64,000 nt of DNA from Octopus bimaculoides (GCF_001194135.2 NC_068991.1:47405631-47469630), one strand, 5' to 3'. Positions 29,300-56,500 are shown, counted from the first letter of the stretch. Translations and numbers: made by a program. Notes: a model not told the origin generated them from the sequence alone.

Positions 29300-29339
<40 letters not shown>

Positions 29340-30279: not shown

Positions 30280-30316
<37 letters not shown>

Positions 30317-33760: not shown

Positions 33761-33915
33761 AAACATTAGATTAACAAATTCTCCCCCTGCCTACCCAACT
33801 TGTGCACACCACCAAAAATGACCAAAGTTAGTATATACACTATTTTGGCTCTCTTTCTAGCTTCATCCTTGTTATTCTCATCCATTCTTCTGTAACATGA
33901 GTAGTTATGTAAGCT

Positions 33916-37138: not shown

Positions 37139-37214
37139 TTAAACATACAAAAAGGCTAGGTAAGACCTGGGCTAATGAGCATGGAAGTTTGAGACAAACT
37201 TCAGTATAACGAAA

Positions 37215-37566
37215 TCGTGATGGTACCTGTGCCCGGCGTCGCCTTCCTGGCACTCGTGCTGGTGGCACGTGTAAAGACATTTGAGCGAGATCGTTGCCAG
37301 TGCCGCTGGACTGGCTACTGTGCAGGTGGCACGTAAAATACAGCATTTTGAGCATGGCTGTTGCCAGTACCGCCTGACTGGCCTTCATGCCGGTGGCACA
37401 TAAAAGCACCCACTACACTCTTGGAGTGTTTGGCGTTAGGAAGGGCATCCAGCTGTAGAAACTCTGCCAGATCAGATTGGAGCCTGGTGTAGTCATCTGG
37501 TTCACCAGTCCTCAGTCAAATCGTCCAACCCATGCTAGCATGGAAAGCGGACGTTAAACGATGATG

Positions 37567-37598
<32 letters not shown>

Positions 37599-37600
37599 AT
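37215..37600 (+). mobile_element. SINE-like family C ending in (GAT)n
   Basis: Ends TTAGGAAGGGCATCCAGCTGTAGAAA...CATGGAAAGCGGACGTTAAACGATGATG. Other copies at about 380-590, 10960-11130(-), 12725-12850(-), 13660-14120(-), 15590-15730, 29740-30090, 34430-34650, 41410-41545(-), 51680-51850. Confidence 0.8.
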
Positions 37601-38539
37601 ACTAAAATATACTAAATACAAGTAATGCAAGTAATATACTAAATACAAGTAATACAAGTAATATACTAAGTGTTTCAAATATATTCATTCATTTTATTTT
37701 TGTTTTCAATGCTAGCATAGATTAAGTGAATATATCATTGAGGCATTGTTTTACAGCTGGATACTCTTCCTGCCACTAACACTTAACTGTTTCCATATAA
37801 GAGATCTCTTCTTTCTTGTTGCTAACCCATACTTGTTTTCCATGTAAAGGATTTCTGTTCCACTTGCCTTTGAAAGTGCTAAGATACAGAACAATGCTCA
37901 GTATTATACTAAATAGAAATTAATTGTACATGCTTATAGTGGTTAACCGTACATTCCTTCTCAATAGTACTTATTTAAAACAAGGTTAGGTGAATAAGTG
38001 TCACTGTAAATAACATGCAGCTTTGCTAGAGACAAAATTACAATGAGCTAATAAGAAAGCTCTTTCACAATCACTCAACCTTTTAGAAAAAGTAGCCAAA
38101 TCCCTTCATATCATATTGTACCGTTTTACAGAAAGAAAAGTCATAATGAACAATATTATTCTACATACTTCTAAAATGATGGGATAATTACAATTGGTTT
38201 GCCTTTGATCATTGGTCTATTCAATTAGGATCAATCTGTAAATGTGCTACAACAACATATTGCAGTACTTGACTCTGGAGAAATAAAAGGCAAAGTCATA
38301 CTAAATCTGAACTTAGAACATAACGAGTTGTAATTAACTGCAGTATTTTCTTTGGCACTTTACCAATCTTGCCATCCACTACCCAATGATGATGATGATG
38401 ATGATGATGATGATAATAATGATAATGGTGATAATGATGGTGGTGATGCTGATGATGATTGAACTGAATTGAAGGCAGTAGAGGCCTTATACAACTAGAA
38501 AACTGCTATAAAATATCCACCATAGGACTACAAAAATAT

Positions 38540-39930
38540 CTGAGTCAGAACCAAGGAAAACTGATACAAATAGTCACAAAGCATGAGCAAAGTAAAAAAG
38601 AAATGTTTTCTGTTTTCAAGGAAGTTGAAAAATTCAAGGAAGAGGTCATAATATCTGACAACTATGAAGAAAAAGAAGAAACATTGAAAGTTATAAAGCA
38701 ACTAAAATCTAAACTAAAACTGGAACTACAAAATACCATGATAAAACAACGGCAAGAAAAGCCCTTACATGGCAGATACTGGGATAAGCTGTGTGTGTGT
38801 TGGCACTCCGTCGCTTACGACAACAAGGGTTCCAGTTGATCCGATCAACAGAACAGCCTGCTCATGAAATTAACGTGCAAGTGGCTGAGCACTCCACACA
38901 CACGTGTACCCTTAATGTAGTTCTCGGAGATATTCAGCGGGACACAGAGTGACAAGGCTTGCCCTTTGAAATACAGGTACAACAGAAACAGGAAGAAAGA
39001 GTGAGAGAAAGTTGTGGTGGAAGAGTACAGCAGGGTTCGCCACCATCCTCTGCTGGAGTCTCGTGGAGCTTTAGGTGTTTTCACTCAATAAACACTCACA
39101 ATGCCTGGTCTGAGAATCAAAACCGCGATCCTATGACTGTGAGTCCACTACCCTAACCACTGTGCCATTGTGCCTCCTGGGATACGCTAAACAGAAAAGA
39201 AATAGACAAAATAAAATCTCAACAGTGGTTGAGAAGTTCAGATCTTAAAGCAGAGACTGGCGGGTTTTTAATTACGGCACAAGAACAAAGTTTCCCCACC
39301 AGAAATCACCAAAAAACACATGATGAAAAATATTATAAGTAACTGCAGAATATATTATGATGGGGAAGAAATAATAAATCATATTTTCTCTGGTCGCCCA
39401 ATCGTAGACAAGAAGAAATACATCCAGAAACACAACAGAGTTGGGACTTATATACATATGAAGTTATGCCAACACTATGACATGGCAACAGGAAAAAGAC
39501 GGTCTAGGCATACACCAGAAAAGCTCTCAGAAAATGACGAAGCAACCATACTCTAAGATATGCCAATACATACAGATAGAGAGATCAAGGCCAATAGACT
39601 AGATGTTGTTATCAGAGACCACCAAGAAAGAAAACACTTTCTAACTGACATATCAGTCCCAACAGACTCTAAAAGAAATTCTCAAAATACAAAGATCTGG
39701 GAATAGAGATGACCTGAATGTAGGGCTTGAAGGCAGAAGTAATCCCTATAATAATAGATGCATTAGACATGGTTAAAAACATTACTGACAAATACATAGC
39801 AAAAAAACCCAGGACTTACAAATATATATAACATACAGAAAATAGCACTGCTAGGCACTGCATACATCCTACGTAAAGCACTTTCAGTACAGTAAAAATA
39901 ACAACACTAAAACAAACCACAACACATATC
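38540..39930 (+). mobile_element. R4/Dong-type non-LTR retrotransposon 3' fragment with nested SINE
   Basis: QEKPLHGRY, QWLRSSDLKAETGGFLITAQEQSFPTRN, HNRVGTYIH, TIL*DMPIHTDREIKANRLDVVIRD...DISVP. Confidence 0.85.
38791..39176 (-). mobile_element. SINE family A copy nested in the R4/Dong fragment
   Basis: TSD CTGGGATA(A/C)GCT at 38779-38790 and 39177-39188. Confidence 0.9.
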
Positions 39931-40060
39931 CTGAAATGTGAAACAAATTACCTGCATCAGTTGTTAGCTGCCAAGACATTGCATCCTTTAAATCCTCCAT
40001 GCTTCCTGAAATTCACCAACACTACACCCGATATCGCCGCCTCCCTATGCATACACACAC

Positions 40061-40443
40061 TTTGTGGCACTCCATCACTTACGATGTCGAGGGTTCCAGT
40101 TGATCCGATCAACGGAACAGCCTGCTTGTGAAATTAACGTGCAAGTGGCTGAGCACTCCACAGACATGTGTACCCTTAACGTAGTTCTCGGAGATATTCA
40201 GCGTGACACAATGTGACAAGGCTGACCCTTTGAATTACAGGCACAACAGAAACAGGAAGTAAGAGTGAGAGAAAGTTGTGGTGAAAGAGTACAGCAGGGT
40301 TCGCCACCATCCCCTGCCAGAGCCTCGTGGAGCTTTAGGTGTTTTCGCTCAATAAACACTCACAACACCCGGTCTGGGAATCGAAACCGCGATCCTATGA
40401 CCACAAGTCCACTGCCCTAACTACTAGGCCATTGCGCCTCCAC
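40061..40443 (-). mobile_element. SINE family A copy
   Basis: Same family, bracketed by 130-bp direct repeats. Confidence 0.9.
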
Positions 40444-40715
40444 ACTCAGAGTTGCTGAAATGCGAAACAAATTACCTGCATCAGTTGTTAGCTGCCAAGA
40501 CATTGCATCCTTTAAATCCTCCATGCTTCCTGAAATTCACCAACACCATACCTGATATCCCCGCCTCCATATGCATACACACACATATAGCATGACTCAT
40601 ACACTGATCACTTTCCTGATATTTGTCCATAATTTTATGTTCTATACATGCACGTTTGATAAGTTGTAGTGCATCTGAGCACTGTACGCAATAATTTCAT
40701 TATTATTATCATTTT
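40441..40715 (+). mobile_element. CR1-like LINE 3' end with (ATT)n tail
   Basis: TLRVAEM(R)NKLPASVVSCQDIASFKSSM resembles the CR1 C-terminal RV..WN.LP..VV.....SFK pattern. Ends in aatttcattattatt. Confidence 0.65.
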
Positions 40716-40879
40716 TTAATGATATGAGATCACAATGTTGCATACATATGGTTGTGATGCATATGCCTGGTGTACCCTTATCAGACAGGTAGTGATGGGC
40801 TTTGTATATTTTACCCAAGTGTCACTTTGATTGCATGCACTGCTCTCTCACTCAATAATAATAACAGTAAATGGTTTCA

Positions 40880-41330
<451 letters not shown>

Positions 41331-41544
41331 GCCACCGTGAATAATAATAAATCTTAAATGATGATGATGATGATGATGATGATAATAATAATAATAATCA
41401 TCATCATCATCATCGTTTAACGTCCGCTTTCCATGCTAGCATGGGTTGGACGATTTGACTGAGGACTGGTGAAACCGGATGGCAACACCAGGCTCTAATC
41501 TGATTTGGCAGAGTTTCTACAGCTGGATGCCCTTCCTAACGCCA

Positions 41545-41577
<33 letters not shown>

Positions 41578-42299
41578 TAAATAATAATAATCCTTTATAC
41601 TAGTGGCTCTCAACTGGGATCCATATGGCCCCTGAGGGTCCATATAAAATTTTTGGGGGTCCATGCAACAAAATAGTAAATTGGGGATCCCCAATAGTAT
41701 TTTAAGGACCCCTGAAAAAATTTTGCATTAGATATATGTATTGGTATGTATTGCAAGAAATAGCTAGTTTTTTTTTCTCTAACATTTTAGACAGTTCAAT
41801 CTACACAAGTTAATGTGTGAAAAACAAAATAGGATAAGACAGTGTGAACATCCACACTTAATTGGATGGAGTAAATGAGGCTACTCATTACTTGACTGGA
41901 CAGAATCAAGTCAACTGTCACTCAGCTGAGCTAAGAGGTGACATCCAACAGCCAGTACACAAAATAGCCACTATTGACCAAGCAAATTATATATCAATAT
42001 TATCACCCCCCCCCCACTCAGAGTTATGTATTATTTCTGTGCCAACATTGCAGTGTTACAGATCAGACGCACTGAATAGTTATCTGTGGTTTAATTAACT
42101 GTTATTGTTTAGACACAGGTGAGCCTCGTTTATGCAGACATATGACCATATATGTAAAATGAGTGAACATCCCATCTTTTTAGAGGTATCGTGTATGTAG
42201 GAAACATCACTGCACCAAACACCCTCTGAATATGAGTGGCACTCAGCTAGATCTCTCACAGTCACTCTAAAAGCTGGGCTTTGCAATCACTGAAGATCT

Positions 42300-42900
42300 T
42301 TCCTTGTGAAAGTACATCTTTATCATAGCTAAAACTACATCTCAAAGGCTAAGTCCTCTCATTAAAGTCAAAAGAGATTTCAACCAGAAACAGCTGTTAA
42401 GATTGCAAGGCTTAAGTGTAGCCCACAATTGAGTACTTTCCCCCATATCTTGGATGCTGCTGTTGCTGATACACACACTAAACAGCCTGGATCGTTTCCA
42501 GAGGAGAGCCACTCAACTGACTGACATTCCCTCACTTAAAGACATTCCAGCCTCTGTCCCACAGGCAATCTATCTCCTTTCTTCATCTTTCCTATTATGA
42601 AAAATGGTCTCTACTTCTGACTGGTCTTGTACCTCAGTTATTCAGGCATCCTCCAATCCACTCATTTCTCCACTTCTCATCACCATTGGTGCATCCAACC
42701 TACTCTCTCCACCCTAACCCCTGTATCCAATTTTCCACCCCCAGAACTTTGATCCTCTGGAACCTCCTCCTCACTCATGTCTTTCCTGCTGGTGTTGACT
42801 TGGAACAGTTTAAATGGAATATTAACATCATCAGTCTCACCAGTCTCAAAGAGTCTGCAAGAGTCATCAGCTTTGCCCTTTCTTCCACACTCAGCATGTA
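42300..42900 (+). mobile_element. LINE 3' fragment (similar to the 17.9-20.7 kb family)
   Basis: F.PRTLILWNLL.THVFPA.VDLEQFKWNIN C-terminal pattern. Confidence 0.5.
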
Positions 42901-43267
42901 AAAAAAGAGGACTGCATCATCTGATGTATTCTTTTTTTAAAGACAGCAGGGTCTGATTTGTGGAAGATTTCAATGCTATTTTTATTGCCTCAAGTGGTCA
43001 CATACAAACAGTTTTGTTGGCTCAACCTGAGGCTGCTTAAGTTTGGACAGTTCTGGCTTACAACTGACCAAGTATGAAAAAGATTGAGAGAAAATAAGAT
43101 CTATACAGTCAGTGCAGTAGTTTCCTAGTTAGTTTGTAAGTTAATTAGTTGTGTTTGTAAATTGTTTGTCCATTGTTCTCAGATACACTAAAGTGATTAG
43201 TAAATCGGAAAAACATATACACAATCACCTACACTCACACACACATTCAATTTCCCATTCACATGAT

Positions 43268-43310
<43 letters not shown>

Positions 43311-43687
43311 NNNNNNNNNNNNNNNNNNNNNNNNNNNNNNNNNNNNNNNNNNNNNNNNNNNNNNNNNNNNNNNNNNNNNNNNNNNNNNNNNNNNNNNNNN
43401 NNNNNNNNNNNNNNNNNNNNNNNNNNNNNNNNNNNNNNNNNNNNNNNNNNNNNNNNNNNNNNNNNNNNNNNNNNNNNNNNNNNNNNNNNNNNNNNNNNNN
43501 NNNNNNNNNNNNNNNNNNNNNNNNNNNNNNNNNNNNNNNNNNNNNNNNNNNNNNNNNNNNNNNNNNNNNNNNNNNNNNNNNNNNNNNNNNNNNNNNNNNN
43601 NNNNNNNNNNNNNNNNNNNNNNNNNNNNNNNNNNNNNNNNNNNNNNNNNNNNNNNNNNNNNNNNNNNNNNNNNNNNNNNNNNNNNNN

Positions 43688-43748
<61 letters not shown>

Positions 43749-44159
43749 TACATATATACATACATACATACACACAAACACACTTACACACACAGAGTCA
43801 CCTATTAATGTATTTAAATATTCATGTGTATATACATATATATACAGACACGCACACACACACACATAGTGGGACATATATGTATGTATATACACAGACA
43901 GGTTGATAGATACACGTACACTAAGTCACCTTGCCAATTACATACATATATATGATCATACTACATACACACATACCTTTACACTGTTGCTTTCCTCATA
44001 CACACTAATTTACCTATCTACCTCACTGTACACACATACGTTAACTTACATGTTTATTCCTCCTCTACAGATACACAATCACACACTTACTCATTTGAAG
44101 GTTCACTCAGGTGATTACAGATGCACACAATACTTAATCATCAAGTTTCTGATACATTC

Positions 44160-44362
44160 AGATGTACACACAGGCACACACAAACACGTGCGCGCACACA
44201 CACACACACAAACACACACACTCGCACACATACACTCAGACACACATGCATACACACACACACACACTCACAATCACATTCACACACACATACATTCTCT
44301 CTCACACACACACACACTCTCACAATCACATTCACACACACACACATATACAAACACACGAC

Positions 44363-44398
<36 letters not shown>

Positions 44399-44602
44399 CA
44401 CACACAACACACACAAACTCAGTCCTCTGCTTCATACTCACATACATATTTACTTATACTCAGACTTCTACCCACAGATTCACATATACACTCAGTGACC
44501 TTCATTCTAACTTCCATTATCCCCACTGCATACACACAATCACTTTATTGTTTAACAAATTTAACATTCCTAATCTCATTAGCAAGTACAAATTATAAAC
44601 AA

Positions 44603-44649
<47 letters not shown>

Positions 44650-44675
44650 ATATATATATATATATATATATATAT
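44160..44675. repeat. Compound (CA)n-derived low-complexity tract plus (TA)n
   Basis: Read directly; produces spurious His/Thr ORFs. Confidence 0.9.
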
Positions 44676-46869
44676 NNNNNNNNNNNNNNNNNNNNNNNNN
44701 NNNNNNNNNNNNNNNNNNNNNNNNNNNNNNNNNNNNNNNNNNNNNNNNNNNNNNNNNNNNNNNNNNNNNNNNNNNNNNNNNNNCTTTGTAAAATATCAAC
44801 TGCACGTGCTCAAGGTTTTTTTTTTTATCTTTATCTTTTAGTCAAGGGGTGAAAACTGTGCTCATAACCCATTACAAGGCCTCTGAAACTAGATGGGAAG
44901 GAAGGTATCCTCAAACTGGAAACCTGGTCCAGTATGAAATCTGTTAAAGGCATCCCAAAGAGGGATTCAGACTCATAATGCCAAGTGCTGGAAGAAGATT
45001 TTTATCCATCCAACATTTTTATAATTCCGGCAATCCACCACTTTAAGTTGATACATTTCTTTTATTAATCTTGAAAGGATGCGAGGCAAAGTTGAGCTCA
45101 GCAGGATTTGAACTCAGAACACAGAGATGTTGAAGCAAATACTGTGACAACACATTAACAACTCCATCAATTCACTAGATTGTCACTGCACCTCGAGTAA
45201 TGAAGTGGTAGTTTCATCATAAATATCAACCTCACTCAATAACATAATCATGGATGATATTGGGGAAACTAATTTTCCGGTAACTTGTTATAAAATATTG
45301 TGGCAGTTGTTCTGAAATAGGACTGCACTCCCTGACACTGATGGGAAATGGGATAATAGTGAGGAGTAACAAAAATATGGATGAAAATATTTCCCCCAGA
45401 GTGCATTCTGTGTTTGTTTTCATAGGCAGTTATAGTACTCATAAATTCAATGCAAATTCAGACAGAAAGTGATTTTCTTTACAAATATTTTTGTTCTTGC
45501 AATATCATGATATGATTTGATCATAATTTGTTTTCAAATATAATTCTTTTTTAATCTTGGTAAAAGACCAGCAATTTTGAAGGGAGGAGAGGAATTGATT
45601 ACATCTTGACTGATACTTTATTTTATTGACTGCCAAAAGGATGAAAAGCAGAGTCAAATATAATAACACACACTCAGAAACAAAGATTTTGCCAAGTCGA
45701 AATCTGGGGCTGTTTATATAACAGTAACAGCTGTTGTTTATAGCAGTCGATTTCAGTATTTTATGAGGGGAATTCATTAATGCTAATCTTAGAAATGATA
45801 CATTTGTAGTTGTATGTGAAATTTTAAAAGTATATATTTTTATTAGTGCTTTTTAAACAGAAGAAACTTTTGCTAAGCTCCTAGCAAGTCACTCGTGCAA
45901 CAGGAAAAGCTTACATGTTTCTCCAATTTTATTAGAACCAATCACAAAGCACCTTGTGACAATCACCATGATACATCTCTGATATTCATCTACATGCATA
46001 GACATGCACACATACATTTTACACTAATAAACTAAGGAACTGTGAGACATCTACAGATATTCTAAAATTTGCTCAGCTTGGAGCTGGAATACATCAGAAC
46101 CAAAAATAAACAGTACAAGAAAGAAGGGACAACCACACGAATAAGGCAATCCCTTTGGCTCTGCTGTCAATTTTTTGTACTGCTTCCTACAACATTTCTC
46201 TTGGGTAGAACAGTTGCAGAGGCCTGTCTGGTCCTCCGAGTAATGCTTCAGATGGCTGTTGCAATAGCTGGTCTACAATTCCCAGTCCTCTTCTTCCCCA
46301 GTTCTAGACTGCTGCCCCAGTTCTAGACTGCTGCCCCAGTATGTACAAGACTTTGAGAAAGGTTACTTACTGGAATCAAAGTAGTGGTTAACAGCAACTT
46401 GTGACTCATGATTACTTTTTCCTCTTTCCTCATCAAAACAACTACAAGCAGGAAAAATATTTTACAGTCTCTCATCCTGAATCAAGGACATTTATTTACT
46501 TCACATTACCATTCTTTGGAGACATCCTTCTCAATGACTCAATGCTGATAATTCCACTTTGGTATCATGCTTATTTCACAGATACAGCTGGAATAGAAGC
46601 CAAATCGTTTGCTATTCTGAACTCTCTACAACATCTAATATTGATTTCAAATTTTGACATAAGGCCAGCAAGTTCGGGGGATGGGGGTAAGTCAATTACA
46701 TCAACCCTCAGTGCTCAACTGGTACTTATTTTATTGACCCTGAAAGGATGAAAGGCAAAGTCAACCCCAGTGGCATTTGAACTCTGAACATAAAGACAGA
46801 TGAAATAACACTAAGCATTTTACCTGGCATGCTAATGATTCTGTCAGCTTGTTACCTTGCAACAGCTAA

Positions 46870-47697
46870 TATCACCAACTATTCATCTCTTTGACCAACA
46901 TGTCGACATCCCACATACCACATGTCAAGTCAAACTTTTTTGACCATCTGTGAGGAAAACAGCACCTTGATGCAATTCACGCTGCCAGAAATCTGGAAAT
47001 GACATGCTGTGCTGCTGGAAGCTCCAATGGAAACATTTCAGTGTGTTCAGGTCTCAATCTGAAGACATGTACTGAGAGTAATAAAAATCTCAAACATTCA
47101 GTCAATATCATTGTGTTTGGAGTGATCACTAGTGATTGCGATGTTTTGCTTCCATTCATCTTCCCACACAGCCTTAGTCTCAACACAGAGGCCTACATTA
47201 AGTGCCTGGAGAAGGTAGTGCTGCCCTGGGTCAAGATGGTGGCTGCTGGAAGACCCCAAGTCTGGTCACAGGATTCTGCACCATATCACACAAGCAGGAG
47301 AACCCAATCATGGCTGTCAAACAATTTCTGCGACCACATCACTTCTAACATCTGACCACCTAACTCCCCAGACTGCAAGCCCCTTGAATATCTTGTGTGG
47401 GGTACGGTTGAGTGAGAGACCAACAAAACTCCTTGTAACACCAAAGATGAACTGAAGGCAAGGATTATGGCAGCATTCACCAACTTAAACAAGGAGACTG
47501 TCTTGAAGAGTTGCAGGAGATTCCAAAGTCGTCTGAAGGCTGTGGTTGAAGCTAATGGTGATTTTATTGAATAAATTCGCTCATTAGTATTTCAAGATAC
47601 TTTTATGTAATTTTGGTAAATATATCTGTTAAAGTGAGATGTCAGTGTTATTTTCATTTTTGCATAATTTAAATGACAGTTTATTCATCACACCCTG
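46870..47697 (+). mobile_element. Second maT-like deletion derivative (same family as 11157-11970)
   Basis: ORF 46999-47355 reads ...FGVITSD..PFIFPH...WSQDSAPYHTSRRTQSWL, followed by PPNSPDC.PL. 3' TIR ...TTATTCATCACACCCTG + TA. 5' end uncertain. Confidence 0.85.
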
Positions 47698-48130
47698 TAT
47701 ATATGTATGTGTGTGTGTGTGTGTGTTTATGTATGTATGTATGTATGTATGAATGTGTGCACGTTTTTATTTATGTGTATAAATATATATATATAGATAT
47801 ATATATGTACATGTATATGTACATAGTCAATCCAAACATGAACAAGCAAGAAAAAACAAAAATGCGAAGACGTGGAATAAGTACAGTGTTATTGGACGCT
47901 CAGGAAAGGAAAGAAAAGAAAGACGATTTCACGTTTCGTTTCGAGCAAGTGGTGTATTGTGTTCTTGAACAAAACATTCAATTTCACGTGGCTCATCTGA
48001 TGTGTGACACACTTGTGCACCTGTACTAGCAATGCTGATATGATCACCATAAACAAATCATTTGTGCAGGTCTTTCAGTAAAAAACTGAACACTCATACA
48101 TTGTCTTCAACAGAAGAGTCCATTAGAGAT

Positions 48131-48170
<40 letters not shown>

Positions 48171-48512
48171 TATAAAAGGGATAAGTTATCCTAGTGGATA
48201 CCATATTATCTCTCAAACTGATATAGATCGATCTATGATTAATCTTTATATTTTGTATCTTTTCATTTGTCTTGCTTGCTTACGTTCTGATGTTTGCTGA
48301 ATTTTCTTGAGAACAATCTTTTCTTAGTGGTCGGACTATAGGTGGTCTACTTCTAGCAAAATGGATATCCACTTGGTGGTCATCCCTCTTATATGTATAA
48401 ATATATATATACACACACACACACATGCTCACACACATGTCTACACACACATAAACAAACACATCTTGAGATATGTAGTTATATCAGTGACATGTTTAAC
48501 ATGTACTTGCAG

Positions 48513-48695
48513 GTAAAACACATCTGCTGTATTCTTGGCTCCTGGGACAACAGGCCGTTGTCAGTACACATCCTACTTTGGAATTTAATGTGGAGAAAAT
48601 TATCACCCGAGATGGTCGTATCTTTTTGGTGTGGGATATTTCTGGGTGTGAGCGATTTCGGCCCAAACGGCGTCATTTTCTTGAAGGAACTCAAG
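48513..48695 (+). CDS. ARF/ARL GTPase exon: xKTHLLYSWLLG...PTLEFNVE...WDISGCERFRPKRRHFLEGTQ
   Basis: ttgcag acceptor and CAAG|GTTTGT donor, 183 bp, phase 1-1. Aligns with Arf G1 end, G2/switch I (PTxGFNVE) and G3 (WDxxG). Confidence 0.9.
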
Positions 48696-48809
48696 GTTTG
48701 TTTAATTTTGCTGCTTGTTCCAAAATTTCACACCCAAGAAATTTTATACATATGTTTGTGTGTGCTTTTATGGACCTCTGTGTATTTGTGTATATGTGAA
48801 TTTGTTTAA

Positions 48810-49028
48810 TCCTTTAGTATTCAGATTACTTTGTCAAAGTAATACTGATTTATTCACATTGTTTTGAATTAATCACACATTACCTTGTTGCTTTGAGATT
48901 TCAATGACGTGATTGTATATTTTTAGAATGACATTGTAGTGTAGGTGTGAGATGCTGGATATGGCCAGTTTAAATATAAAATAGGTAGAACATTTGGGCT
49001 GGATATGGTTGGTTTAAATGCTAAAGGG
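48810..49028. mobile_element. piggyBac-like MITE
   Basis: TTAA-(T/C)CCTTTAG ... CTAAAGGG-TTAA ends. Confidence 0.7.
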
Positions 49029-49394
49029 TTAACAGCTATAAATTGTTTTATCTTCTTCATGGAGCACAATATTAATTTACTGGTGCACTTGAGATTTGAT
49101 AAAAAAACATTAAAGGCACATTTCACAGGAAACGTTAAGCAAAACCATTACAAAGTTAAAAAATTTAGATTAAAATGTATTCTTTTGTTTGTTTCGGTCA
49201 TTTGATTGCAGCCATGCTGGAGCACCACCTTGAAGGATTTTAGTTGAACAAATCAATCCCAGAGCATATTTCTTAAGCCTAGTACTTATTCTATTGGTCT
49301 CTTTTGCCAAACTGCTAAGTTACAGGGATGTAAACACACCAACACCGGTTGTCAAATGGTGATGGGGAGACAAGCACAGACACAAAGACACATA

Positions 49395-49478
<84 letters not shown>

Positions 49479-49518
49479 TAGATAGATAGATAGATAGATA
49501 GGAGAAGATATATTAGAT

Positions 49519-49809
49519 CAGGGGCTCTTAGCCATTTTTTACCTATAGCCTCTTTGATTACTATTTTATTCAAAATTTCTATTTTGTTTTTCACACATCA
49601 ACTCGTGTAAGTTGAACAATGTAAAATGTTAGAGAAAGAACCCTAAATGTTTCTTGCAATACATACCAATACATACATCTAAAGCAAAATTTTTTTTAGG
49701 GATTCTTAAAATACTATTGTGGATCTCCAATTTACTGTTTTATTGCATGGACCCCACAAATCTTATATGGACCCTCAGGGGCCATGTGGATCTTGGTTGA
49801 GAACCACTG
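49519..49809. mobile_element. hAT-like MITE (related copy at 41602-41830)
   Basis: TIR CAGTGGTTCTCAA (one end degenerate), TSD TATTAGAT / TATAAGAT. Confidence 0.75.
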
Positions 49810-50088
49810 TATAAGATAATGTAGTTCTACATATCCCTAAAGTAAAAAACAGGATGATCATAAATGGAGTGCCTTTACTCATAAGCCTGCTTCATCAAGA
49901 CAGAACAAGTGAGATAAATAACAACATCTATTTCACTATTCTATTGTCATGTTATCTGTTGCCTGATTGGGTTCTGCTTGAAGGAAATACAGAACTGGTT
50001 AGTGTCTTTCTCTGTGTTAGTGCATCTCAATCAGTCAACATGCTACAATCACTAGTTCACTGATGTGCAAATGAGGGCATCTCTGAGT

Positions 50089-50421
50089 CAATGGTTCTCA
50101 AATGGGGTCTATATAAGATTTTGCTGTTAATATTTATGTGCAGTAAATTGCTTATACTTTTACAATACACAAAATATTTTAATGTTTTCATACAATTTCT
50201 AGTAATATTTAATTATAAAAATACAGTAGGATTTTTTTTATATACATATGCGCAAGTGTGGTTGTGTGGTAAGCAACTTGCTTCCCAACCACATGGTTCT
50301 GGGATCAGTCCTACTGCGTGGCATCTTGGGCAAGTATCTTCTACTATAGCCTCAGGCCGACCAAAGCCTTGTGAGTGGATTTGGTAGATGGAAACTGAAA
50401 GATGTCCATTGTGTATATATA

Positions 50422-50459
<38 letters not shown>

Positions 50460-50740
50460 TTTGTTTGTCCCTCCACCATCGCTTGACAACTGATGTTGGT
50501 GTGTTTACATTTCTGTAACTTAGCGGTTCAGCAAAAGATATCGATAGAATAAGTACTAGGCTTACAAAGAAAAAGTCCTGGATCGATTTGTTCGACTGAA
50601 GGTGGTGCTCCAGCATGGCCACAATCTAAATGACTGAAACAAATAAAAGAATAAAAGAAGAATACAATGGTTATGGAGGTCCAGTAAAACAAAATAGGAA
50701 TTAAAGGGGTCCATAGGCAAAAAATGGTTGAGAACCACTG
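50089..50740. mobile_element. hAT-like MITE carrying a SINE-B insertion
   Basis: TIRs CAATGGTTCTCAA / TTGAGAACCACTG, imperfect 8-bp TSD CTCTGAGT / CTCTAAGC. Confidence 0.7.
50244..50655 (+). mobile_element. SINE family B copy nested in a hAT-like MITE
   Basis: Full-length match to 1331-1760. Confidence 0.85.
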
Positions 50741-51383
50741 CTCTAAGCAGTCATTCCTGCATTTACCCATTTTCCCCTCAAAATCATCTGCAATAAAAAC
50801 TGAAAGATATAGCATAGTATGTTCTCTTTCAGACCCTATTGAAACCCTTAATCCTCTTGCTGAATATCAAATAAAGAATATCAAATCCAATGAAACATTA
50901 CAAAATCCTTGAGATACGTTTTATGTATTTTTTCACCAGACACTAGCTAAGAGCATCCATTATTGAAGAAATCAAAGAAATTATCCCATTTTTCAATAAC
51001 CCTTTTGTTATAATATTTCTGTTGGAATACACTGCCTTTGTTTCTTTTGATTTTGAAAATTATATGAAGAATGTAGTAAATTAATTCTTTCATTATTAAG
51101 CTGGGGGTTTGGAACATAAAATAACAAGAAATTTTAATAGAAAATTTAAATTTAGTTCTCTTTGAAACAAAACGCTGGTATCACATAACAAGTACCAGTC
51201 AGAAGCAACTTGGTTTCCAAAGGGCTCACACAATTTTTTAATATAATAGTTTTTAAAGCTATGGCACTCACATATCCCAGGTTCAAATTCATAGGTATAA
51301 AGAAATAAAACTGTAATATCCATGTCTTTTAAAAGGGCACAATTGATATACATAATAACATTTATCTATTATTGTCTTTTCAG

Positions 51384-51518
51384 CTATTGTTTTTGTGATA
51401 GACAGTGCAAAACCTTTGCAGCTAAAATTGGCAAAACTTGATCTTTGGGAGATCCTGCAAGAAAATGAACTGAAACTTTGTCCTCTCTTAGTTATAGCTA
51501 ACAAACAAGACAGCAAAG
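51384..51518 (+). CDS. ARF/ARL GTPase exon: AIVFVIDSA...PLLVIANKQDSK (G4 motif)
   Basis: ttttcag acceptor and AAAG|GTATTC donor, 135 bp, phase 1-1, in frame with the previous exon. Carries the NKQD motif. Confidence 0.92.
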
Positions 51519-52928
51519 GTATTCTTAGCTGTATTATGTTTTGTTTTTGTTGTTTTATTTGTGTTATAATTGTCATTATTGTTTTATAGTTTATCTTTTA
51601 AAGGTTTCAGTAATTCAGTTGCTGGTTTACTGAAGAATTTGATAATTTTGAAACATAATTATTTTTTAATAGCCATCTACACTCTCAGAGTGGTTGGCAT
51701 TAGGAAGGGCATCCAGCTGTAGAAACTCTGCCAAATCAGATTGGAGCCTGGTGTAGCCATCCGGTTTCAACAATCCTCAATGAAATCGTCCAACCCATGC
51801 TAGCATGGAAAGCAGACATTAAACGATGATGATGATGATGATGATGATGATCATTGATGAATCCAATTTTGTCAGTTGTGCTGTCCCGTTTAAAATGAAC
51901 GCCTGGGTATGTGTGATCAGTTAAAGATTGGATAGGTTAATGTACATAAGGCATCACATATAACTTGTAATCTAAACTAGAGTCTGGATCCAATGATAAA
52001 GCTGACCAATTTAATTGGTAATCCCATTTTCTGGCTACAGAATACAATGGTTTCTTGTTGCTTACTGCCAACCCACTTGAGTTATTATCTTCCATAGAAG
52101 GTAATAAAACAGTTATTCATATACAGTTCTCCTGATCCTTACAGTAATAAGTTTTACTTGTGTATTTGAAACTCACTATTGTAAATCAATTGGAGAGTTA
52201 GGCGCCAAGTCTATAGACACAACACAGTAACATTGATGGAATACAAACGAACTCTCAACCTTTCAGCCACTAATCTTATAATCCTCTTCCCTCAATCTGT
52301 TGTCATTCTATAATTTTATAATAATTTTAAATCCAGTGATGACAATATGGAATGACAATAAGTCTTCATTTAACTTATATCCATAACCTTGTCGTAGTTC
52401 TTGGTTGGAAGCACTTCATATACATTATTGAAGCCTTCAAGATATGCAGGAACTTCACAATTCAATAGAATGCAATTATGGATGATCCTCTTCTTTAGAA
52501 TATCTAGGTAGGTTTTAGAGTTTATGGTTGAATCTTGAAACATCAATTAAATACTAACTCTTCCTTTGAAGAAATGAAACTCCACTCCTTCATGTAGACA
52601 CAAACAATGTCATAATGGCTGAAACATTATCTAAATACCAGCTCTTCCTTTGAAGAAATGAAATCCCCTCTTCCACACAGACACACACAATGTCATAATG
52701 GTTAGGTATTGCTTGACTCTTGAAAGTGTATACCTAGGATTATACCTTGAGTTTGATGAACAATAAATGAAAAAAGATGTAGATGTAAATTATTTAGTGG
52801 ATTTCTCATCTCATCACTAAACAGTCCTTTATATTGCTTGTAACAATTATTAGTACTTCATATAAAATTACATTTCAGTAATTTTTTTACTATTATCTTA
52901 ATACAGTCTTGAATTTTTCTAATTCTAG

Positions 52929-53092
52929 AAAGCCTTCCTGTGGAGAATGTATCAGACGAGATGGGACTTAGCAACATACAAGACAGAATGTGGTCAATTA
53001 TAGCTATCAGTGCTTTAGAAACAGAAGGGGTTGATAAAGCATTGCGTGAGTTGTGTCGGCTTCTTGATGAGCACCGAGCTTCCATGCCTTAA
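52929..53092 (+). CDS. ARF/ARL GTPase terminal exon: ESLPVENVSDEMGLSNIQDRMWSIIAISALETEGVDKALRELCRLLDEHRASMP*
   Basis: ttttctaattctag acceptor, phase 1, TAA at 53090-53092. Shows the Arf C-terminal pattern (GL..I..R.W.I...SA..xEG). Confidence 0.9.
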
Positions 53093-53562: not shown

Positions 53563-56500
53563 GGAAATATATTTAAATATTGTCAAGCAATATATTACTN
53601 NNNNNNNNNNNNNNNNNNNNNNNNNGACTGTTAAATCTTGATAACATTGATGACTATTCAGACATATTGATCAGAAGTACATGGCCTTTCTTTATGCTGG
53701 AGAATATATATAGAGCCTGGGTAGCTCAGTGTTGGTAAAAAGAAATAGAACAAAACATAGCAAAAATATTTTTTGAGAGAAAAAGAAGAGTTATTTCCAA
53801 TGAGTTAATGTTAGCCATGGGTGAAGCATGTAAACTGTGTGTGTGTGTGTATGAATATGCCATTTCCTAATTCAAAGATAGACATAGCCATGTTGTCAAA
53901 CAAATTTCTGCTCATCAGAACAGCATCCAAAAATTTTGCTTTTCTAGTTTAGGTGAGCGCTTGGATTGTGCATATGGTCTGACCATATCTGGATGGAAGT
54001 AAAAGATGCAGGCTCTGCTTAGCAGAGAGGAGTATCNNNNNNNNNNATATATATATATATGGAAATATATTTAAATATTGTCAAGCAATATATTACTGGT
54101 TATGGCATATAACTGGTCAGAAGGTTACCATCACTTTTACACTGACTGTTAAATCTTGATAACATTGATGACTATTCAGACATATTGATCAGAAGTACAT
54201 GGCCTTTCTTTATGCTGGAGAATATATATAGAGCCTGGGTAGCTCAGTGTTGGTAAAAAGAAATAGAACAAAACATAGCAAAAATATTTTTTGAGAGAAA
54301 AAGAAGAGTTANNNNNNNNNNNNNNNNNNNNNNNNNNNNNNNNNNNNNNNNNNNNNNNNNNNNNNNNNNNNNNNNNNNNNNNNNNNNNNNNNNNNNNNNN
54401 NNNNNNNNNNNNNNNNNNNNNNNNNNNNNNNNNNNNNNNNNNNNNNNNNNNNNNNNNNNNNNNNNNNNNNNNNNNNNNNNNNNNNNNNNNNNNNNNNNNN
54501 NNNNNNNNNNNNNNNNNNNNNNNNNNNNNNNNNNNNNNNNNNNNNNNNNNNNNNNNNNNNNNNNNNNNNNNNNNNNNNNNNNNNNNNNNNNNNNNNNNNN
54601 NNNNNNNNNNNNNNNNNNNNNNNNNNNNNNNNNNNNNNNNNNNNNNNNNNNNNNNNNNNNNNNNNNNNNNNNNNNNNNNNNNNNNNNNNNNNNNNNNNNN
54701 NNNNNNNNNNNNNNNNNNNNNNNNNNNNNNNNNNNNNNNNNNNNNNNNNNNNNNNNNNNNNNNNNNNNNNNNNNNNNNNNNNNNNNNNNNNNNNNNNNNN
54801 NNNNNNNNNNNNNNNNNNNNNNNNNNTATATATATATATATATATATATGTATGTACGTATGTATGTATACATACACATACATGCATACAAACATGGCAT
54901 ACATGTGTGTGTATGTGTGTATGTACATGCACACACACACACACACACACACACACAACATACACATGTATGATGCATGCATGTATGTATATGAAATGAA
55001 AATTCTCCTGCACCCTCCATATACATAGGGCTCTTATAACCTTGTACCATATTAGTTTCTATGAGTTCGTTGAAGTTCCGTAAGCAGTCTCTTTTTCATA
55101 TCAGAATCAACAGCAGTGCTTTGCAAAATCTTACTTTTGAAGAAGGTTTAATAAGATTGTGAATCTGAACACAGAACAAAAAGAGCCAAAACAGATTCCA
55201 TGAGCCATCTTGTCTCATATTCTAACTATTCCAAATAAGCACTCTTGACTGGTTCATTATTTTATCAACGCTCATAGGATGAAAGGTGAAGTTGACTTGC
55301 CAGTACTTGAAGTAAGTGTGCAGAGTCCCTGAACAAATGTCATAAAGTATTTTATTTGGCTCTTTAATGACTTTTGCTCCCCAACCATGTGGTTTTGGAT
55401 TCAGTCCCATTGTGCTGTATCTAGGACAAGTGTCTTCTACTATAACTCTGGGTCAACTGAAACCTTCTGAGTGAATTTGAGAGTCAGCAACTGAAAGAGA
55501 CCCATCATGTGTGTGTGTGTGTGTGTTTATGTCTCTTTGCCTTGACATTGCTCAGTATTTGTAAAGGAGCATCACTGTCATACAAGCGGTATTGTTTATT
55601 TCCAATCTTCATAAAAATAAGCTTGACCATGGGGTAATATTTCCTTGCTTGGAAACTGATGAAGGTTGGCAACAAGAGGGGGCATCAAGCTGTAGCAAAT
55701 ATTTCAATGAATTCCGTCTGACATGGCAACATTAAAAAGTGGACATTTAAACAATAATGAGTCTGATGATAATAATGATGATGTAATCGTTATTAAATTG
55801 AAGTGAGGTAAAATATGGCAAACATGAGCATTGTTGGCCTTATGCCTAGATTAGAAACCATTATTATCACTAAGGTGATGGATGATAGAAACGTTAGCAT
55901 ATCCGACAGAATGCTTAGTAGAATTTAGCTGGGTTCAAATCCATATAAGGTTGACTTTGCTTTTTATCCCTCCAAAGTTGTTAAAAAAAGTACCAATCAA
56001 GTACTGAGACTGAATAAAACTTCATATTATAATTTTTTATTTAGGCAAGGCACAAATCTTTTTTTTTTTTTCTTTTCATAGGAAATGGTGATGGACAATA
56101 TATACAGCTTCAATTTATTACAGGTATTTGTTTGGCCAACTCCACAATAATGCAAAATAAATTTGTCTCTAGTAGAATTTGAACTCTGTAGAACAAATAA
56201 CTAAACTTTAGATACCTGAAAACATCTAAAGTCTGGTTCTCTATAGTTTCAGCTCTCTTTCACTAAAACATGACTGCATATAACTCTAATATACTCCACA
56301 TTATCACATACGTTTTGTGCATTTTCCAAACTACTAACTGTTGCATGTATTGTCTCACCTTCACACTCCAAATCTTACTTGAGACAAGAGGGAGTCACTA
56401 TATAGTTACTTGACCAACTAGAAAAATCAACTAAATCTCTCTCAAATCACTCCCTAATGTTTAAAACAAAAGAAAGGACATACTGAATAACGTAGTCCTA

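What the first reader, a model, noticed from the sequence alone, without database searches (positions are those of the whole stretch)
48513..53092. Atypical ARF-like GTPase with the catalytic Gln and switch residues replaced
Seen: three intact, phase-compatible exons encode a complete Arf fold from the end of G1 to the C-terminus. Compared with Arf1 (recalled), PTIGFNVE becomes PTLEFNVE (G50E), WDVGGQ becomes WDISGC (catalytic Q71C) and PLWRHY becomes PKRRHF (W78R), while NKQD and the G5 SA are kept. Known: Q71 substitution blocks GAP-stimulated hydrolysis in Arfs, and W78 contributes to the interswitch/switch II surface. Inference: this is an intact but GTPase-deficient or constitutively GTP-bound Arf-like protein (or a pseudo-GTPase) with altered effector and GEF specificity, possibly a mollusc- or cephalopod-specific ARL subfamily.
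Basis: partly seen in the sequence, partly recalled or inferred. Interest (0 to 1): 0.7.

Follow-up and report, generated by a model that had tools for sequence, protein, structure and literature searches.

The report
Mollusc-only divergent Arl19-type small GTPase
This is an intact, conserved octopus gene for an Arf-like small GTPase from an unnamed, apparently mollusc-only offshoot of the little-known Arl19 group; it has lost the catalytic glutamine and the usual partner-binding surface, which is unusual in detail but ordinary in kind.

Summary
Window 48513-53092 (+) holds coding exons 2-4 of a four-exon gene. Exon 1 is at 24397-24487. The product is 190 aa. The window is Octopus bimaculoides, and the protein is identical in O. 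sinensis.

The protein is a clear Arf-fold GTPase. G1, the switch-I Thr, DxxG, NKQD and SAL are intact. The Arf1 positions G50, G69, Q71, L77 and W78 read E, S, C, K and R.

It is not decaying: dN/dS is 0.05-0.08 among cephalopod-type sequences.

It is not cephalopod-specific. Orthologues occur in bivalves and gastropods, including Lottia "ArlX1", left unclassified by Vargová et al. 2021. They share MG..C(S/T) N-termini, WD[IL]SG, an acidic 49/50 and a basic 77-79. The Q71 position varies (C/D/S/K/A/N).

Three results place its origin in Arl19, not Arl20:
- Three of three intron positions and phases match.
- It shares a one-residue interswitch insertion.
- Arl19 is the consistent best BLAST hit.

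The likely mechanism is inferred, not shown. The protein would be anchored to membrane by two lipid groups, bind guanine nucleotide, lack glutamine-dependent hydrolysis, and have a recharged effector/GEF surface. Several non-cephalopod orthologues have lost NKxD and G5, which points towards pseudo-GTPases.

Interest is modest: this is a new member of a known kind.

The parts
24397..24487 (+). Coding exon 1 (91 nt). It runs from the start ATG through MGVPLSCRGGSGGHLLGGPSKVLMVGPTKA to the first base of the Gly31 codon, followed by donor GTAGGT. It carries the predicted myristoylation site Gly2 (Ser6 fits the G-x-x-x-S/T rule) and the candidate palmitoylation site Cys7.
   Evidence: tblastn of the full-length orthologues; sequence read; same exon length (91 nt) as Mya arenaria Arl19 exon 1
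24488..48512 (+). Intron 1, 24 kb, phase 1, splitting the Gly codon of the P-loop GKT. It contains assembly gaps and repeats.
   Evidence: same position and phase in Haliotis, Lottia, Mya Arl19 and both Acanthaster Arl19 copies
48513..48695 (+). Coding exon 2 (183 nt): end of G1 (GKT), switch I, interswitch and switch II. Key codons: E54 at 48581-48583 (Arf1 G50), S74 at 48641-48643 (G69), C76 at 48647-48649 (Q71), K82-R83-R84 at 48665-48673 (L77-W78-R79).
51384..51518 (+). Coding exon 3 (135 nt): strand beta4, helix alpha3 and the G4 motif NKQD. The preceding intron is phase 1 at the Arf1 G87 position, shared with Arf1-type and Arl19 genes.
52929..53092 (+). Coding exon 4 (164 nt, stop TAA 53090-53092): the G5 motif (I-S-A-L) and the C-terminal helix. 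The preceding intron is phase 1, just after NKQDSK, as in Arl19 genes.
52906..52928 (+). Extension created by an alternative upstream acceptor, used by the predicted isoform X3 (157 aa). It shifts the frame and truncates the protein before G5, so the product is probably non-productive.
56081..56182 (+). Alternative terminal exon of predicted isoform X2 (169 aa). It replaces exon 4 with an unrelated 33-residue tail, so G5 and the last helix are lost. It lies where the neighbouring TFIIA-type gene starts in O. sinensis.

Best explanation
The locus is an intact, selectively constrained, four-coding-exon gene of Octopus bimaculoides; spliced transcripts of its 80%-identical relatives exist in other samples. 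It encodes a 190-aa Arf-like small GTPase. The gene belongs to an unnamed clade found so far only in molluscs. The clade arose by duplication and rapid divergence of an Arl19-type gene before bivalves, gastropods and cephalopods split. Arl19 is an Arf6/Arl4-related metazoan group that vertebrates lack.

Proposed mechanism; the first sentence of each point is shown, the rest is inferred:
1. The usual N-terminal amphipathic helix of Arfs is replaced by a Gly/Ser/Pro-rich linker starting MG...S-C. The protein is therefore probably held on membrane permanently by N-myristate plus S-palmitate, as G-alpha and Src-family proteins are, rather than by a GTP-driven myristoyl/helix switch.
2. In cephalopods every residue that contacts the nucleotide or Mg is kept: GxxxxGKT, the switch-I Thr, DxxG, NKQD and SAL. 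The protein should therefore bind guanine nucleotide.
3. The catalytic Gln is absent, and that position is unconstrained across the family. Hydrolysis by the Arf/ArfGAP route should be lost, leaving a mostly GTP-bound or very slowly cycling protein.
4. The hydrophobic surface of switch I and switch II that Arfs present to Sec7 GEFs and effectors (I49, G50, L77, W78) has become a conserved acidic 49/50 plus a basic K/R-R-R patch. Its partners should therefore differ from those of Arfs.

In Haliotis, Lottia, Potamilus and P0161 the G4 motif, the G5 motif or both are also lost. The conserved role of the family may therefore not need a nucleotide cycle.
For: Gene model and Arf identity.

Fold: the AlphaFold2 model has pLDDT 86 and pTM 0.84, with residues 1-16 disordered. 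The best Foldseek matches are GTP-form ARL1, ARF1 and ARF6, with target TM 0.91-0.93 and rmsd 1.5 A. GDP forms fit worse, at rmsd about 4 A.

Constraint:
- The protein is identical in the O. bimaculoides and O. sinensis assemblies.
- The two CDSs differ at 5 aligned sites with identical proteins, so all differences are synonymous. Flanking introns are 4-25% diverged.
- dN/dS is 0.076 (octopus versus P0002 transcript) and 0.046 (P0002 versus P0157, dS 0.94).
- Intron-less 573-nt CDSs in 1.2-1.7 kb Logan contigs show spliced mRNA.

Family:
- An exhaustive phmmer search puts only mollusc proteins above the generic Arf background: Potamilus, Ylistrum, Solemya and Haliotis.
- Lottia XP_009065776.1, which is LgiArlX1 and listed as 'unannotated', also belongs.
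- Family monophyly is 480/500 and 476/500 in NJ bootstraps.
- The shared derived residues are tabulated.

Arl19 origin:
- The three phase-1 introns (A|GKT, GTQ|x, NKQDxx|x) are identical in Mya arenaria Arl19 (coding exons 91/177/135/164 nt versus 91/183/135/164 in octopus) and in both tandem Acanthaster Arl19 copies.
- Arl19 is the top BLASTP hit for 10 of the 11 family members in a Lottia/Helobdella/Capitella reference set; the exception, P0157, has Arl1 first and Arl19 second.
- The +1 residue in the interswitch hairpin occurs in the 10 Arl19-type sequences tested (one of them, P0051, is mammalian ARL11) and in most of the family.

Lipidation: Lottia ArlX1 is predicted to be myristoylated and palmitoylated at C5 (PMC8358228 supplementary tables). 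All members have MG-x3-(S/T) plus a Cys at position 5 or 7. The N-terminus has a low hydrophobic moment, 0.31 versus 0.5-0.6 in Arf1 and Arl19.
Against: - No biochemical, localisation or octopus expression data were available.
- The distance phylogeny does not place the family next to Arl19. The sister group is unresolved: Arl20 24-29%, Arl19 14%, Arl1 10-12%. The Arl19 origin therefore rests on gene structure, one indel and similarity ranking.
- Restriction to molluscs is an absence-of-evidence claim, based on the top 150 representatives of 50%-identity clusters.
- Whether octopus also keeps a canonical Arl19 was not determined.
- GTPases without the Gln can still be switched off by GAPs that supply the catalytic residue in trans, as Rap and RapGAP do. 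Loss of Q71 therefore does not prove a GTP-locked state.
- Loss of NKxD in gastropod and unionid orthologues argues that nucleotide binding may be dispensable for the conserved function.
- The AF2 model was made without ligand, so it is weak evidence on conformation.
Confidence: 0.6

Rival explanations
1. The octopus protein is a true pseudo-GTPase. It keeps the fold and some motifs but acts as a membrane-bound scaffold independent of nucleotide state, as the gastropod and unionid orthologues appear to do.
For: - NKxD is replaced by NQLK/NQMK in Haliotis, NQSQ in Lottia and NTRS in Potamilus. G5 is lost in Haliotis, Lottia and P0161, yet these genes remain intact.
- The Q71 position is unconstrained family-wide.
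- The N-terminal switch helix is lost.
Against: Cephalopod-type sequences, the scallop and Solemya keep G1, the switch-I Thr, DxxG, (N/T)KQD and an S/C-A/S-L G5. The cephalopod-type sequences do so under dN/dS of about 0.05-0.08. Such retention is hard to explain if nucleotide binding were irrelevant in that lineage.
Confidence: 0.2
2. It is a normally cycling switch. Hydrolysis is provided by a dedicated, unknown GAP that supplies the catalytic residue in trans, and exchange by a non-Sec7 GEF.
For: All nucleotide and Mg contacts are kept in cephalopods. Established knowledge, not tested here: Rap, Sar1 (His) and Arl13-type proteins work without a cis Gln. The conserved basic switch II and acidic 49/50 could be a docking surface for such regulators.
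Against: No candidate regulator was identified. The family has lost the amphipathic helix that couples Arf nucleotide state to membrane binding. Several orthologues lost base-recognition motifs.
Confidence: 0.2
3. It is simply a divergent orthologue of an already named subfamily that has these residues: Arl20, or ARL11/ARF5/'ARF11' as the database names suggest.
For: - Arl20 also lacks Q71 (it has R) and W78 (F/M/L). It was the most frequent NJ sister, at 24-29%.
- Automatic names: 'ARF5-like', 'ADP-ribosylation factor 11', 'ARL11'.
Against: - Octopus, Lottia, Haliotis and Solemya each have a separate Arl20.
- The Lottia Arl20a/b introns (G24 phase 1, G50 phase 1, I74|R75 phase 0, about residue 150 phase 1) share nothing with this gene.
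- Arl20 keeps G50 and, in three of the four sequences tested, G69.
- Mammalian ARL11 (P0051) has the canonical WDVGGQ.
- ARF5-type genes keep all canonical residues and have a different first and third intron.
Confidence: 0.03
4. It is a decaying duplicate, an assembly error or an annotation artefact.
For: The switch residues are unusual. One database model (O. vulgaris, 129 aa) skips exon 2, and two predicted isoforms are truncated.
Against: - The frame is open across four exons with canonical splice sites.
- The protein is identical in two independent Octopus assemblies, with only synonymous differences.
- The Argonauta protein is 97-98% identical.
- dN/dS is 0.05-0.08.
- Spliced transcripts exist in many RNA samples of related species.
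Confidence: 0.01

Closest known systems
Arl19 (holozoan ARF-family group defined by Vargová et al. 2021, PMC8358228; absent from vertebrates; no functional study found)
   Same: - All three intron positions and phases are identical, and the coding exon sizes are nearly so.
- Both have a one-residue insertion in the interswitch hairpin, with a (S/T)P.xG-like turn.
- Both have a C-terminal helix of the M/L-x-x-L-x-x-L-V type instead of the Arf 'LDWL'.
- Arl19 is the consistent best BLASTP hit.
- Both have Gly2.
   Different: Arl19 keeps canonical PTIGFNVE, WDVGGQ and (P/Q/R)LW(R/K)HY and has an amphipathic N-terminal helix. This clade has E/D/S/A at 50, S at 69, no Gln at 71, K/R at 78 and an MG..C dual-acylation N-terminus. 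It evolves much faster. It coexists with canonical Arl19a/b in Lottia.
Lottia gigantea ArlX1 (XP_009065776.1), 'unannotated' ARF-family member in Vargová et al. 2021
   Same: It falls in the same clade, has the same three introns and the same family signature, and is predicted to be N-myristoylated and palmitoylated at C5.
   Different: It is only 28% identical. Lottia has additionally lost the DxxG Gly (WEISSK), NKxD (NQSQ), G5 and the switch-I Thr (now Ser). It looks like a pseudo-GTPase, whereas the octopus protein keeps these motifs.
Arl20 (Vargová et al. 2021)
   Same: It is an Arf1-like offshoot without Gln71 (it has Arg) and without Trp78 (F/M/L). Some members start MG..C (CteArl20 MGIGCS).
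   Different: The intron set is different. It keeps G50, generally keeps G69 (three of four sequences tested) and has a C-terminal extension. A separate Arl20 gene is present in Octopus, Lottia, Haliotis and Solemya.
Arf1/Arf5/Arl1 (best structural and sequence matches in PDB)
   Same: The fold is the same (TM 0.91-0.93, 33-39% identity). The phase-1 intron at the G87 position is shared with an Arf1-type gene. The aromatic residues F51, W66 and Y81 (here F) are kept.
   Different: The catalytic Gln, G50, G69, L77 and W78 are replaced. There is no amphipathic N-terminal helix. The first and third introns differ.
Other Arf-likes lacking the catalytic Gln (Arl13, Arl15, Arl16, Arl10/Arl9, Lottia Arl4; Sar1 has His)
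   Same: The Gln is absent while the P-loop and NKxD are intact. Palmitoylation near the N-terminus is known or predicted for Arl13, Arl15 and Arl16 (PMC8358228).
   Different: All of them keep G50 (except Sar1) and W78. None has the acidic 49/50 together with the basic 77-79. They are ancient or metazoan-wide, not mollusc-restricted.

Membership tests
ARF family (Pfam PF00025) | Significant match to the Arf profile over the whole GTPase domain, and an Arf-type fold | tested here: met
   PF00025 E=7e-34, 117 bits against a cut-off of 22.3. PDB hits to ARF5 and ARL1 at E about 4e-27. AF2 model with Foldseek target TM 0.91-0.93 to ARL1, ARF1 and ARF6.
ARF family (Pfam PF00025) | Guanine-nucleotide-binding motifs G1 (GxxxxGKT), G2 Thr, G3 (DxxG), G4 (NKxD), G5 (SA) | tested here: met
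   The octopus protein has GPTKAGKT, T52, D72-I-S-G75, N131-K-Q-D134 and S164-A-L. Actual nucleotide binding was not tested.
True Arfs (Arf1/Arf4/Arf6) | Canonical PT(I/V)GFNVE, WDVGGQ and PLWRHY, and a myristoylated amphipathic N-terminal helix | tested here: not met
   The protein reads PTLEFNVE, WDISGC and PKRRHF. The N-terminus is Gly/Ser/Pro-rich, has a hydrophobic moment of 0.31 versus 0.60, and is disordered in the model.
Arl19 | Gene structure: three phase-1 introns at A|GKT, GT(Q/D/E)|G and NKQDxx|x | tested here: met
   The octopus positions match Mya arenaria Arl19 and both Acanthaster planci Arl19 copies. Lottia ArlX1 shares three (the third is one codon off in the alignment) and Haliotis shares two. 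The pattern was established here from three Arl19 genes, not from a published definition.
Arl19 | One-residue insertion in the interswitch hairpin (F51-to-W66 spacing 16 instead of 15) | tested here: met
   It is present in the 10 Arl19-type sequences tested (one of them mammalian ARL11) and in most of this family (Ylistrum has 17). It is absent from Arf1/4/6, Arl1/2/5 and from Arl20a and CteArl20; Arl20b has a longer loop.
Arl19 | Phylogenetic grouping with Arl19 sequences | tested here: inconclusive
   NJ bootstrap leaves the sister group of the family unresolved, and Arl19 itself is not recovered (2/500). This agrees with the paper, where Arl19 is 'not a resolved clade'. Arl19 is the best BLASTP hit for 10 of the 11 members.
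Arl19 | Canonical switch residues (WDVGGQ, LW(R/K)HY) and an amphipathic N-terminus, as in the Arl19 sequences compared here | tested here: not met
   For this reason the protein is filed as an Arl19-derived paralogue, not as an ordinary Arl19 member.
Arl20 | Three group-specific intron positions (PMC8358228), and being the species' Arl20 orthologue | tested here: not met
   The Lottia Arl20a/b introns (G24 phase 1, G50 phase 1, I74|R75 phase 0, about residue 150 phase 1) share nothing with this gene. Octopus has a separate Arl20-type protein, P0257/XP_029651602.1.
ARL11 / 'ARF11' / ARF5 (names given by databases) | Orthology to the vertebrate proteins of that name, with canonical Gln | tested here: not met
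   ARL11 and ARL14 are vertebrate novelties (PMC8358228). Mammalian ARL11 (P0051) has WDVGGQ. The octopus protein is about 38% identical to ARF5. The names come from automatic similarity labelling.
Pseudo-GTPase | Loss of motifs needed for nucleotide binding | tested here: not met
   Only the catalytic Gln is lost in octopus, while G1-G5 are intact. The feature is met for the Haliotis, Lottia and Potamilus orthologues, where G4 and G5 are lost or degraded. Biochemistry was not tested.
Dual-acylated (N-myristoyl + S-palmitoyl) membrane proteins | Met-Gly start, Ser/Thr at position 6, and a nearby Cys | tested here: met
   All 11 family members have MG-x3-(S/T) with a Cys at position 5 or 7. For Lottia ArlX1, published predictors call it myristoylated (2 tools) and palmitoylated at C5 (4 tools). 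The modification itself cannot be tested with these tools.

The most novel reading that the evidence does not exclude
The clade shows a small GTPase turning into a pseudo-GTPase, with different stages preserved in different mollusc classes. After duplication of Arl19, the ancestor swapped the nucleotide-coupled amphipathic helix for a permanent myristoyl-palmitoyl anchor. It also swapped the hydrophobic effector surface for a complementary acidic (49/50) and basic (77-79) pair, possibly a salt-bridge latch that fixes the switch regions in a GTP-like shape. That made the nucleotide cycle dispensable. Cephalopods, scallops and protobranchs still bind nucleotide, while gastropods and unionids have let G4 and G5 decay. 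The protein would then be a constitutively 'on', lipid-anchored adaptor with mollusc-specific partners.
Probability: 0.25. Interest if true: 0.55.

Novelty: new member of a known kind. Interest (0 to 1): 0.33.

Why it matters
The result gives a name and an origin to a set of mis-labelled mollusc proteins. Databases call them 'ARF5-like', 'ARF 11', 'ARL11' or 'hypothetical'. Together with Lottia 'ArlX1', the one member left unclassified in the standard ARF-family survey, they form one mollusc-restricted paralogue derived from Arl19.

For GTPase biologists, the family is a natural series of Arf-fold proteins in which three things are remodelled under purifying selection: the catalytic Gln, the W78/L77/G50 partner surface and the N-terminal switch helix. 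G4 and G5 are retained in some classes and lost in others. That makes it usable material for asking how a switch becomes a scaffold.

It does not change any general principle. Gln-less, lineage-specific Arf-likes are common.

Tried and rejected
1. The word-indexed homologue search with the octopus protein alone returned only cephalopod-type hits, which wrongly suggested a cephalopod-only gene. The exhaustive phmmer search and a profile search corrected this. The profile search was patchy and did not even return three of its own seed sequences.
2. Distance (NJ) phylogeny with 500 bootstraps, run twice. Family monophyly is robust, but the sister group is unresolved. No ML program was available. 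One Biopython bootstrap run never returned a result.
3. Arl20 origin, the most frequent NJ sister: rejected by intron positions and by the coexistence of a separate Arl20.
4. Synteny. The Haliotis and Lottia genes both sit next to MCM8. A tblastx search of the gastropod flanks against the window found nothing, so synteny with octopus neither supports nor contradicts orthology.
5. The species behind the Logan transcripts (SRR27666xxx, SRR29271xxx) could not be identified. They are called cephalopod-type only because of 80-83% identity and 498/500 bootstrap grouping with the octopods.
6. P0099, a second Arl19-like gene, turned out to be intron-less on a metagenome scaffold and so was uninformative.
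7. The whole-protein splice search of the fused Acanthaster model failed. It was solved by treating the two tandem copies separately.
8. Literature searches for mollusc-specific Arf-likes or for Arl19 function found nothing beyond PMC8358228 and one preprint.
9. The model coordinates are not exposed, so the proposed E54-R83 contact could not be measured.

Full report
**Observation**

The window is eukaryotic, AT-rich (about 35% GC) and full of microsatellites and assembly gaps. It is 100% identical to Octopus bimaculoides chromosome record CM046611.1 and about 90% identical in introns to O. sinensis.

They have canonical AG/GT boundaries, and all introns are phase 1. Spliced, they give a 160-residue open frame ending in TAA. 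That frame matches Pfam Arf (PF00025) at E=7e-34 and ARF5, ARL1, ARF3 and ARF1 chains of the PDB at E about 1e-27, with 36-39% identity.

A tblastn search with full-length orthologues located the missing first coding exon 24 kb upstream, at 24397-24487. It encodes MGVPLSCRGGSGGHLLGGPSKVLMVGPTKA plus the first base of the Gly codon of GKT, followed by GTAGGT. The complete CDS is 573 nt (91+183+135+164), or 190 aa.

In Arf1 numbering the protein has I49L, G50E, G69S, Q71C, L77K, W78R and Y81F.

**Is it a live gene?**

The same 190-aa protein is annotated in two independent assemblies, O. bimaculoides XP_014772560.1 and O. sinensis XP_029643002.1. Their CDSs differ at 5 aligned sites with identical proteins, so all differences are synonymous. 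The adjoining intron sequence is 4-25% diverged. Argonauta hians is 97-98% identical.

Two further proteins of 80-83% identity (P0002, P0157) are encoded without introns on 1.2-1.7 kb contigs. These come from about 35 contigs of Logan assemblies (sample accessions SRR27666xxx and SRR29271xxx), so they are spliced mRNAs. All keep PTLEFNVE, WDISGC and RPKRRHF.

Nei-Gojobori dN/dS is 0.076 for octopus versus P0002, where dS is saturated. It is 0.046 for P0002 versus P0157 (dS 0.94, dN 0.043). Decay, assembly error and annotation artefact are excluded.

**Wider family**

An exhaustive phmmer search of 1.84 billion cluster representatives shows a gap after the cephalopod-type cluster (347 bits). 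A small set of single-domain proteins then scores 112-128 bits, above the generic Arf plateau of about 100-105 bits. These are from Potamilus streckersoni (a unionid), Ylistrum balloti (a scallop), Solemya velum (a protobranch) and Haliotis species.

A profile search added Haliotis rufescens, an unidentified Logan transcript (P0161) and Lottia gigantea XP_009065776.1. The Lottia protein is 'LgiArlX1', the single Lottia ARF-family member left 'unannotated' in the eukaryote-wide survey of Vargová et al. 2021 (PMC8358228).

The 11 sequences share several features:
- An MG-x3-(S/T) start with a Cys at position 5, or position 7 in cephalopods.
- LLYSW after the P-loop in most members.
- No Gly at position 50, with at least one acidic residue at 49/50.
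- WD[IL]SG, that is G69S.
- Any residue but Gln at position 71: C, D, S, K, A or N.
- A basic K/R-R-R at 77-79 in place of L-W-R.

In a reference set of the Lottia, Helobdella and Capitella ARF complements, W78 is invariant in every named paralogue except Arl20. G50 is invariant in all except Sar1. The combination is therefore unique to this clade.

By contrast, lack of Gln71 alone is common. Arl20, Lottia Arl4, Arl10, Arl13, Arl15, Arl16 and Sar1 all lack it.

NJ bootstrap support for monophyly of the clade is 480/500 and 476/500. Support for the cephalopod subclade is 498/500. Among the listed hits that score above the generic Arf background, every one of known origin is a mollusc.

**Origin**

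Sequence trees do not resolve the sister group: Arl20 24-29%, Arl19 14%, Arl1 10-12%. Arl19 itself is not recovered, as in the published trees. Gene structure does resolve it.

The octopus introns are all phase 1:
- In the Gly codon of A|GKT.
- In the codon after GTQ (Arf1 G87).
- In the codon after NKQDSK (Arf1 N132).

Haliotis shares the first and third. Lottia ArlX1 shares all three, with the third one codon off in the alignment.

Lottia Arl20a and Arl20b have introns at G24 phase 1, G50 phase 1, I74|R75 phase 0 and about residue 150 phase 1. None is shared. Octopus, Lottia, Haliotis and Solemya also each carry a separate Arl20. An Arf1-type gene (Conger) has G50 phase 1, G87 phase 1 and Q128|D129 phase 0, so one intron is shared.

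An Arl19 gene of the bivalve Mya arenaria (P0043) is 56% identical to LgiArl19a and has canonical WDMGGQ and PLWRMY. It has exactly the three octopus introns and coding exons of 91/177/135/164 nt, against 91/183/135/164 in octopus. Both copies of a tandem Arl19 pair in the starfish Acanthaster planci have the same three phase-1 introns.

Two further observations agree:
- Arl19 is the top BLASTP hit for 10 of the 11 family members.
- The clade and the 10 Arl19-type sequences examined share a one-residue insertion in the interswitch hairpin. The F51-W66 spacing is 16 rather than 15, with a (S/T)P.xG-like turn.

I conclude that the clade is a fast-evolving paralogue of Arl19. It arose before the split of bivalves, gastropods and cephalopods, and it coexists with canonical Arl19a/b at least in Lottia. 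Arl19 itself has no functional literature.

**How it probably works**

Shown:
- The fold is Arf-like. The AF2 model has pLDDT 86 and pTM 0.84. It superposes best on GTP-form ARL1, ARF1 and ARF6 (rmsd 1.5 A) and worse on GDP forms (about 4 A).
- Residues 1-16 are disordered in the model. They are 63% Gly/Pro/Ser/Thr/Asn and have a helical hydrophobic moment of 0.31, against 0.5-0.6 in Arf1 and Arl19.
- All nucleotide and Mg contacts are intact in cephalopods.

Inferred:
1. Gly2 with Ser6, plus Cys7, is a classical N-myristoylation and palmitoylation signal. Published predictors call the Lottia orthologue myristoylated and C5-palmitoylated. The protein is probably anchored to membrane permanently rather than through the Arf helix/myristoyl switch.
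2. It binds guanine nucleotide.
3. It has no Gln, and the family does not constrain that position, so Gln- and ArfGAP-type hydrolysis is lost. Q71L and Q67L are the standard GTP-locking mutations, as the titles of many PDB entries show.
4. The I49/G50/L77/W78 surface used by Sec7 GEFs and Arf effectors (established knowledge) has become acidic plus basic. Its partners should differ from those of Arfs. The aromatic residues F51, W66 and Y81 (here F) remain.

Haliotis, Lottia and Potamilus have lost NKxD, and Haliotis, Lottia and P0161 have lost G5. The family-wide function may therefore not depend on a nucleotide cycle. This gives the pseudo-GTPase reading real weight, though less for octopus, where the motifs are conserved under strong constraint.

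**Comparison and verdict**

The gene is not an Arf proper, not Arl20, and not ARL11 or ARF5 as databases label it. It is an Arl19-derived, apparently mollusc-restricted ARL paralogue whose only earlier mention is as an unclassified Lottia sequence.

The biochemical inference is plausible but untested. The emphasis on Q71C should shift to the family-wide changes: G69S, acidic 49/50, basic 77-79 and the dual-acylation N-terminus.

Lineage-specific divergent Arf-likes without the catalytic Gln are frequent, so this is a new member of a known kind and of modest interest. The graded loss of nucleotide-binding motifs across mollusc classes is the most attractive follow-up.

Noticed in passing
window 7970-9889 (- strand): An uninterrupted 639-codon ATG-initiated ORF in a GC-richer stretch (45% versus about 35%). 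It encodes a low-complexity Ser/Thr/Val/Gln/Asn-rich protein with a basic/acidic C-terminal region that matches Pfam DUF4764 (E=7e-9, 35 bits, above the cut-off). It is probably a large exon or an intron-less gene upstream of the Arf-like gene, on the opposite strand.
   Followed up: partly
window 49274-49398 and 50440-50564: A 125-nt inverted repeat pair (82% complementary, 1 kb apart) inside intron 2. Each arm lies next to a microsatellite: (CT)n(AT)n(GATA)n at 49400-49500 and (TG)n at about 50425-50460. They look like two SINE-type element copies in opposite orientation.
   Followed up: partly
window 52906-52928 and 56081-56182: NCBI isoforms X3 (157 aa) and X2 (169 aa) use an upstream acceptor that shifts the frame, or a distant AT-rich terminal exon. 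Both remove G5 and the C-terminal helix. The X2 exon lies where the downstream TFIIA-type gene begins in O. sinensis, so it may be a read-through artefact.
   Followed up: partly
protein P0003 (Octopus vulgaris 'ADP-ribosylation factor 11', 129 aa) versus window exons: The O. vulgaris gene model joins exon 1 directly to exon 3. It skips exon 2 (GKT, both switches and the interswitch) although the frame stays open, because both introns are phase 1. It is either an annotation error or an exon-skipping isoform encoding a non-GTPase product.
   Followed up: no
window about 56060 onwards (+ strand); locus L005 37086-39183: The downstream neighbour in O. sinensis is a TFIIA (PF03153) gene on the same strand. 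In Haliotis and Lottia the orthologous Arf-like gene is instead followed by MCM8 on the opposite strand, so local synteny is conserved between the two gastropods but not with octopus.
   Followed up: partly
window 18001-20000: A GC-rich stretch (45%) with strong negative GC skew (-0.21), about 5 kb upstream of the start codon. The 161-aa ORF at 19015-19500 has no Pfam match. It could be a repeat, a promoter or CpG-type region, or an untranslated exon.
   Followed up: no
proteins P0186 and P0318-P0331 (Logan contigs, unknown species): A further family member is seen only as genomic read-through of exon 2. It reads GKTHLLYSWLLGRNDLETVPTDSFNVERIVSGTCVYMMWDLCGCKDFRLKRRQFFHGTDG. It has Cys at both the G69 and the Q71 positions and the same exon boundaries, and it is present in 23 cluster members.
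   Followed up: no
locus L017 (Acanthaster planci DF978587.1): The annotated 390-aa starfish protein XP_022097941.1 is a fusion of two adjacent tandem Arl19 genes, each with its own Met-Gly start and the same four-exon structure. It is probably a gene-model merge.
   Followed up: partly
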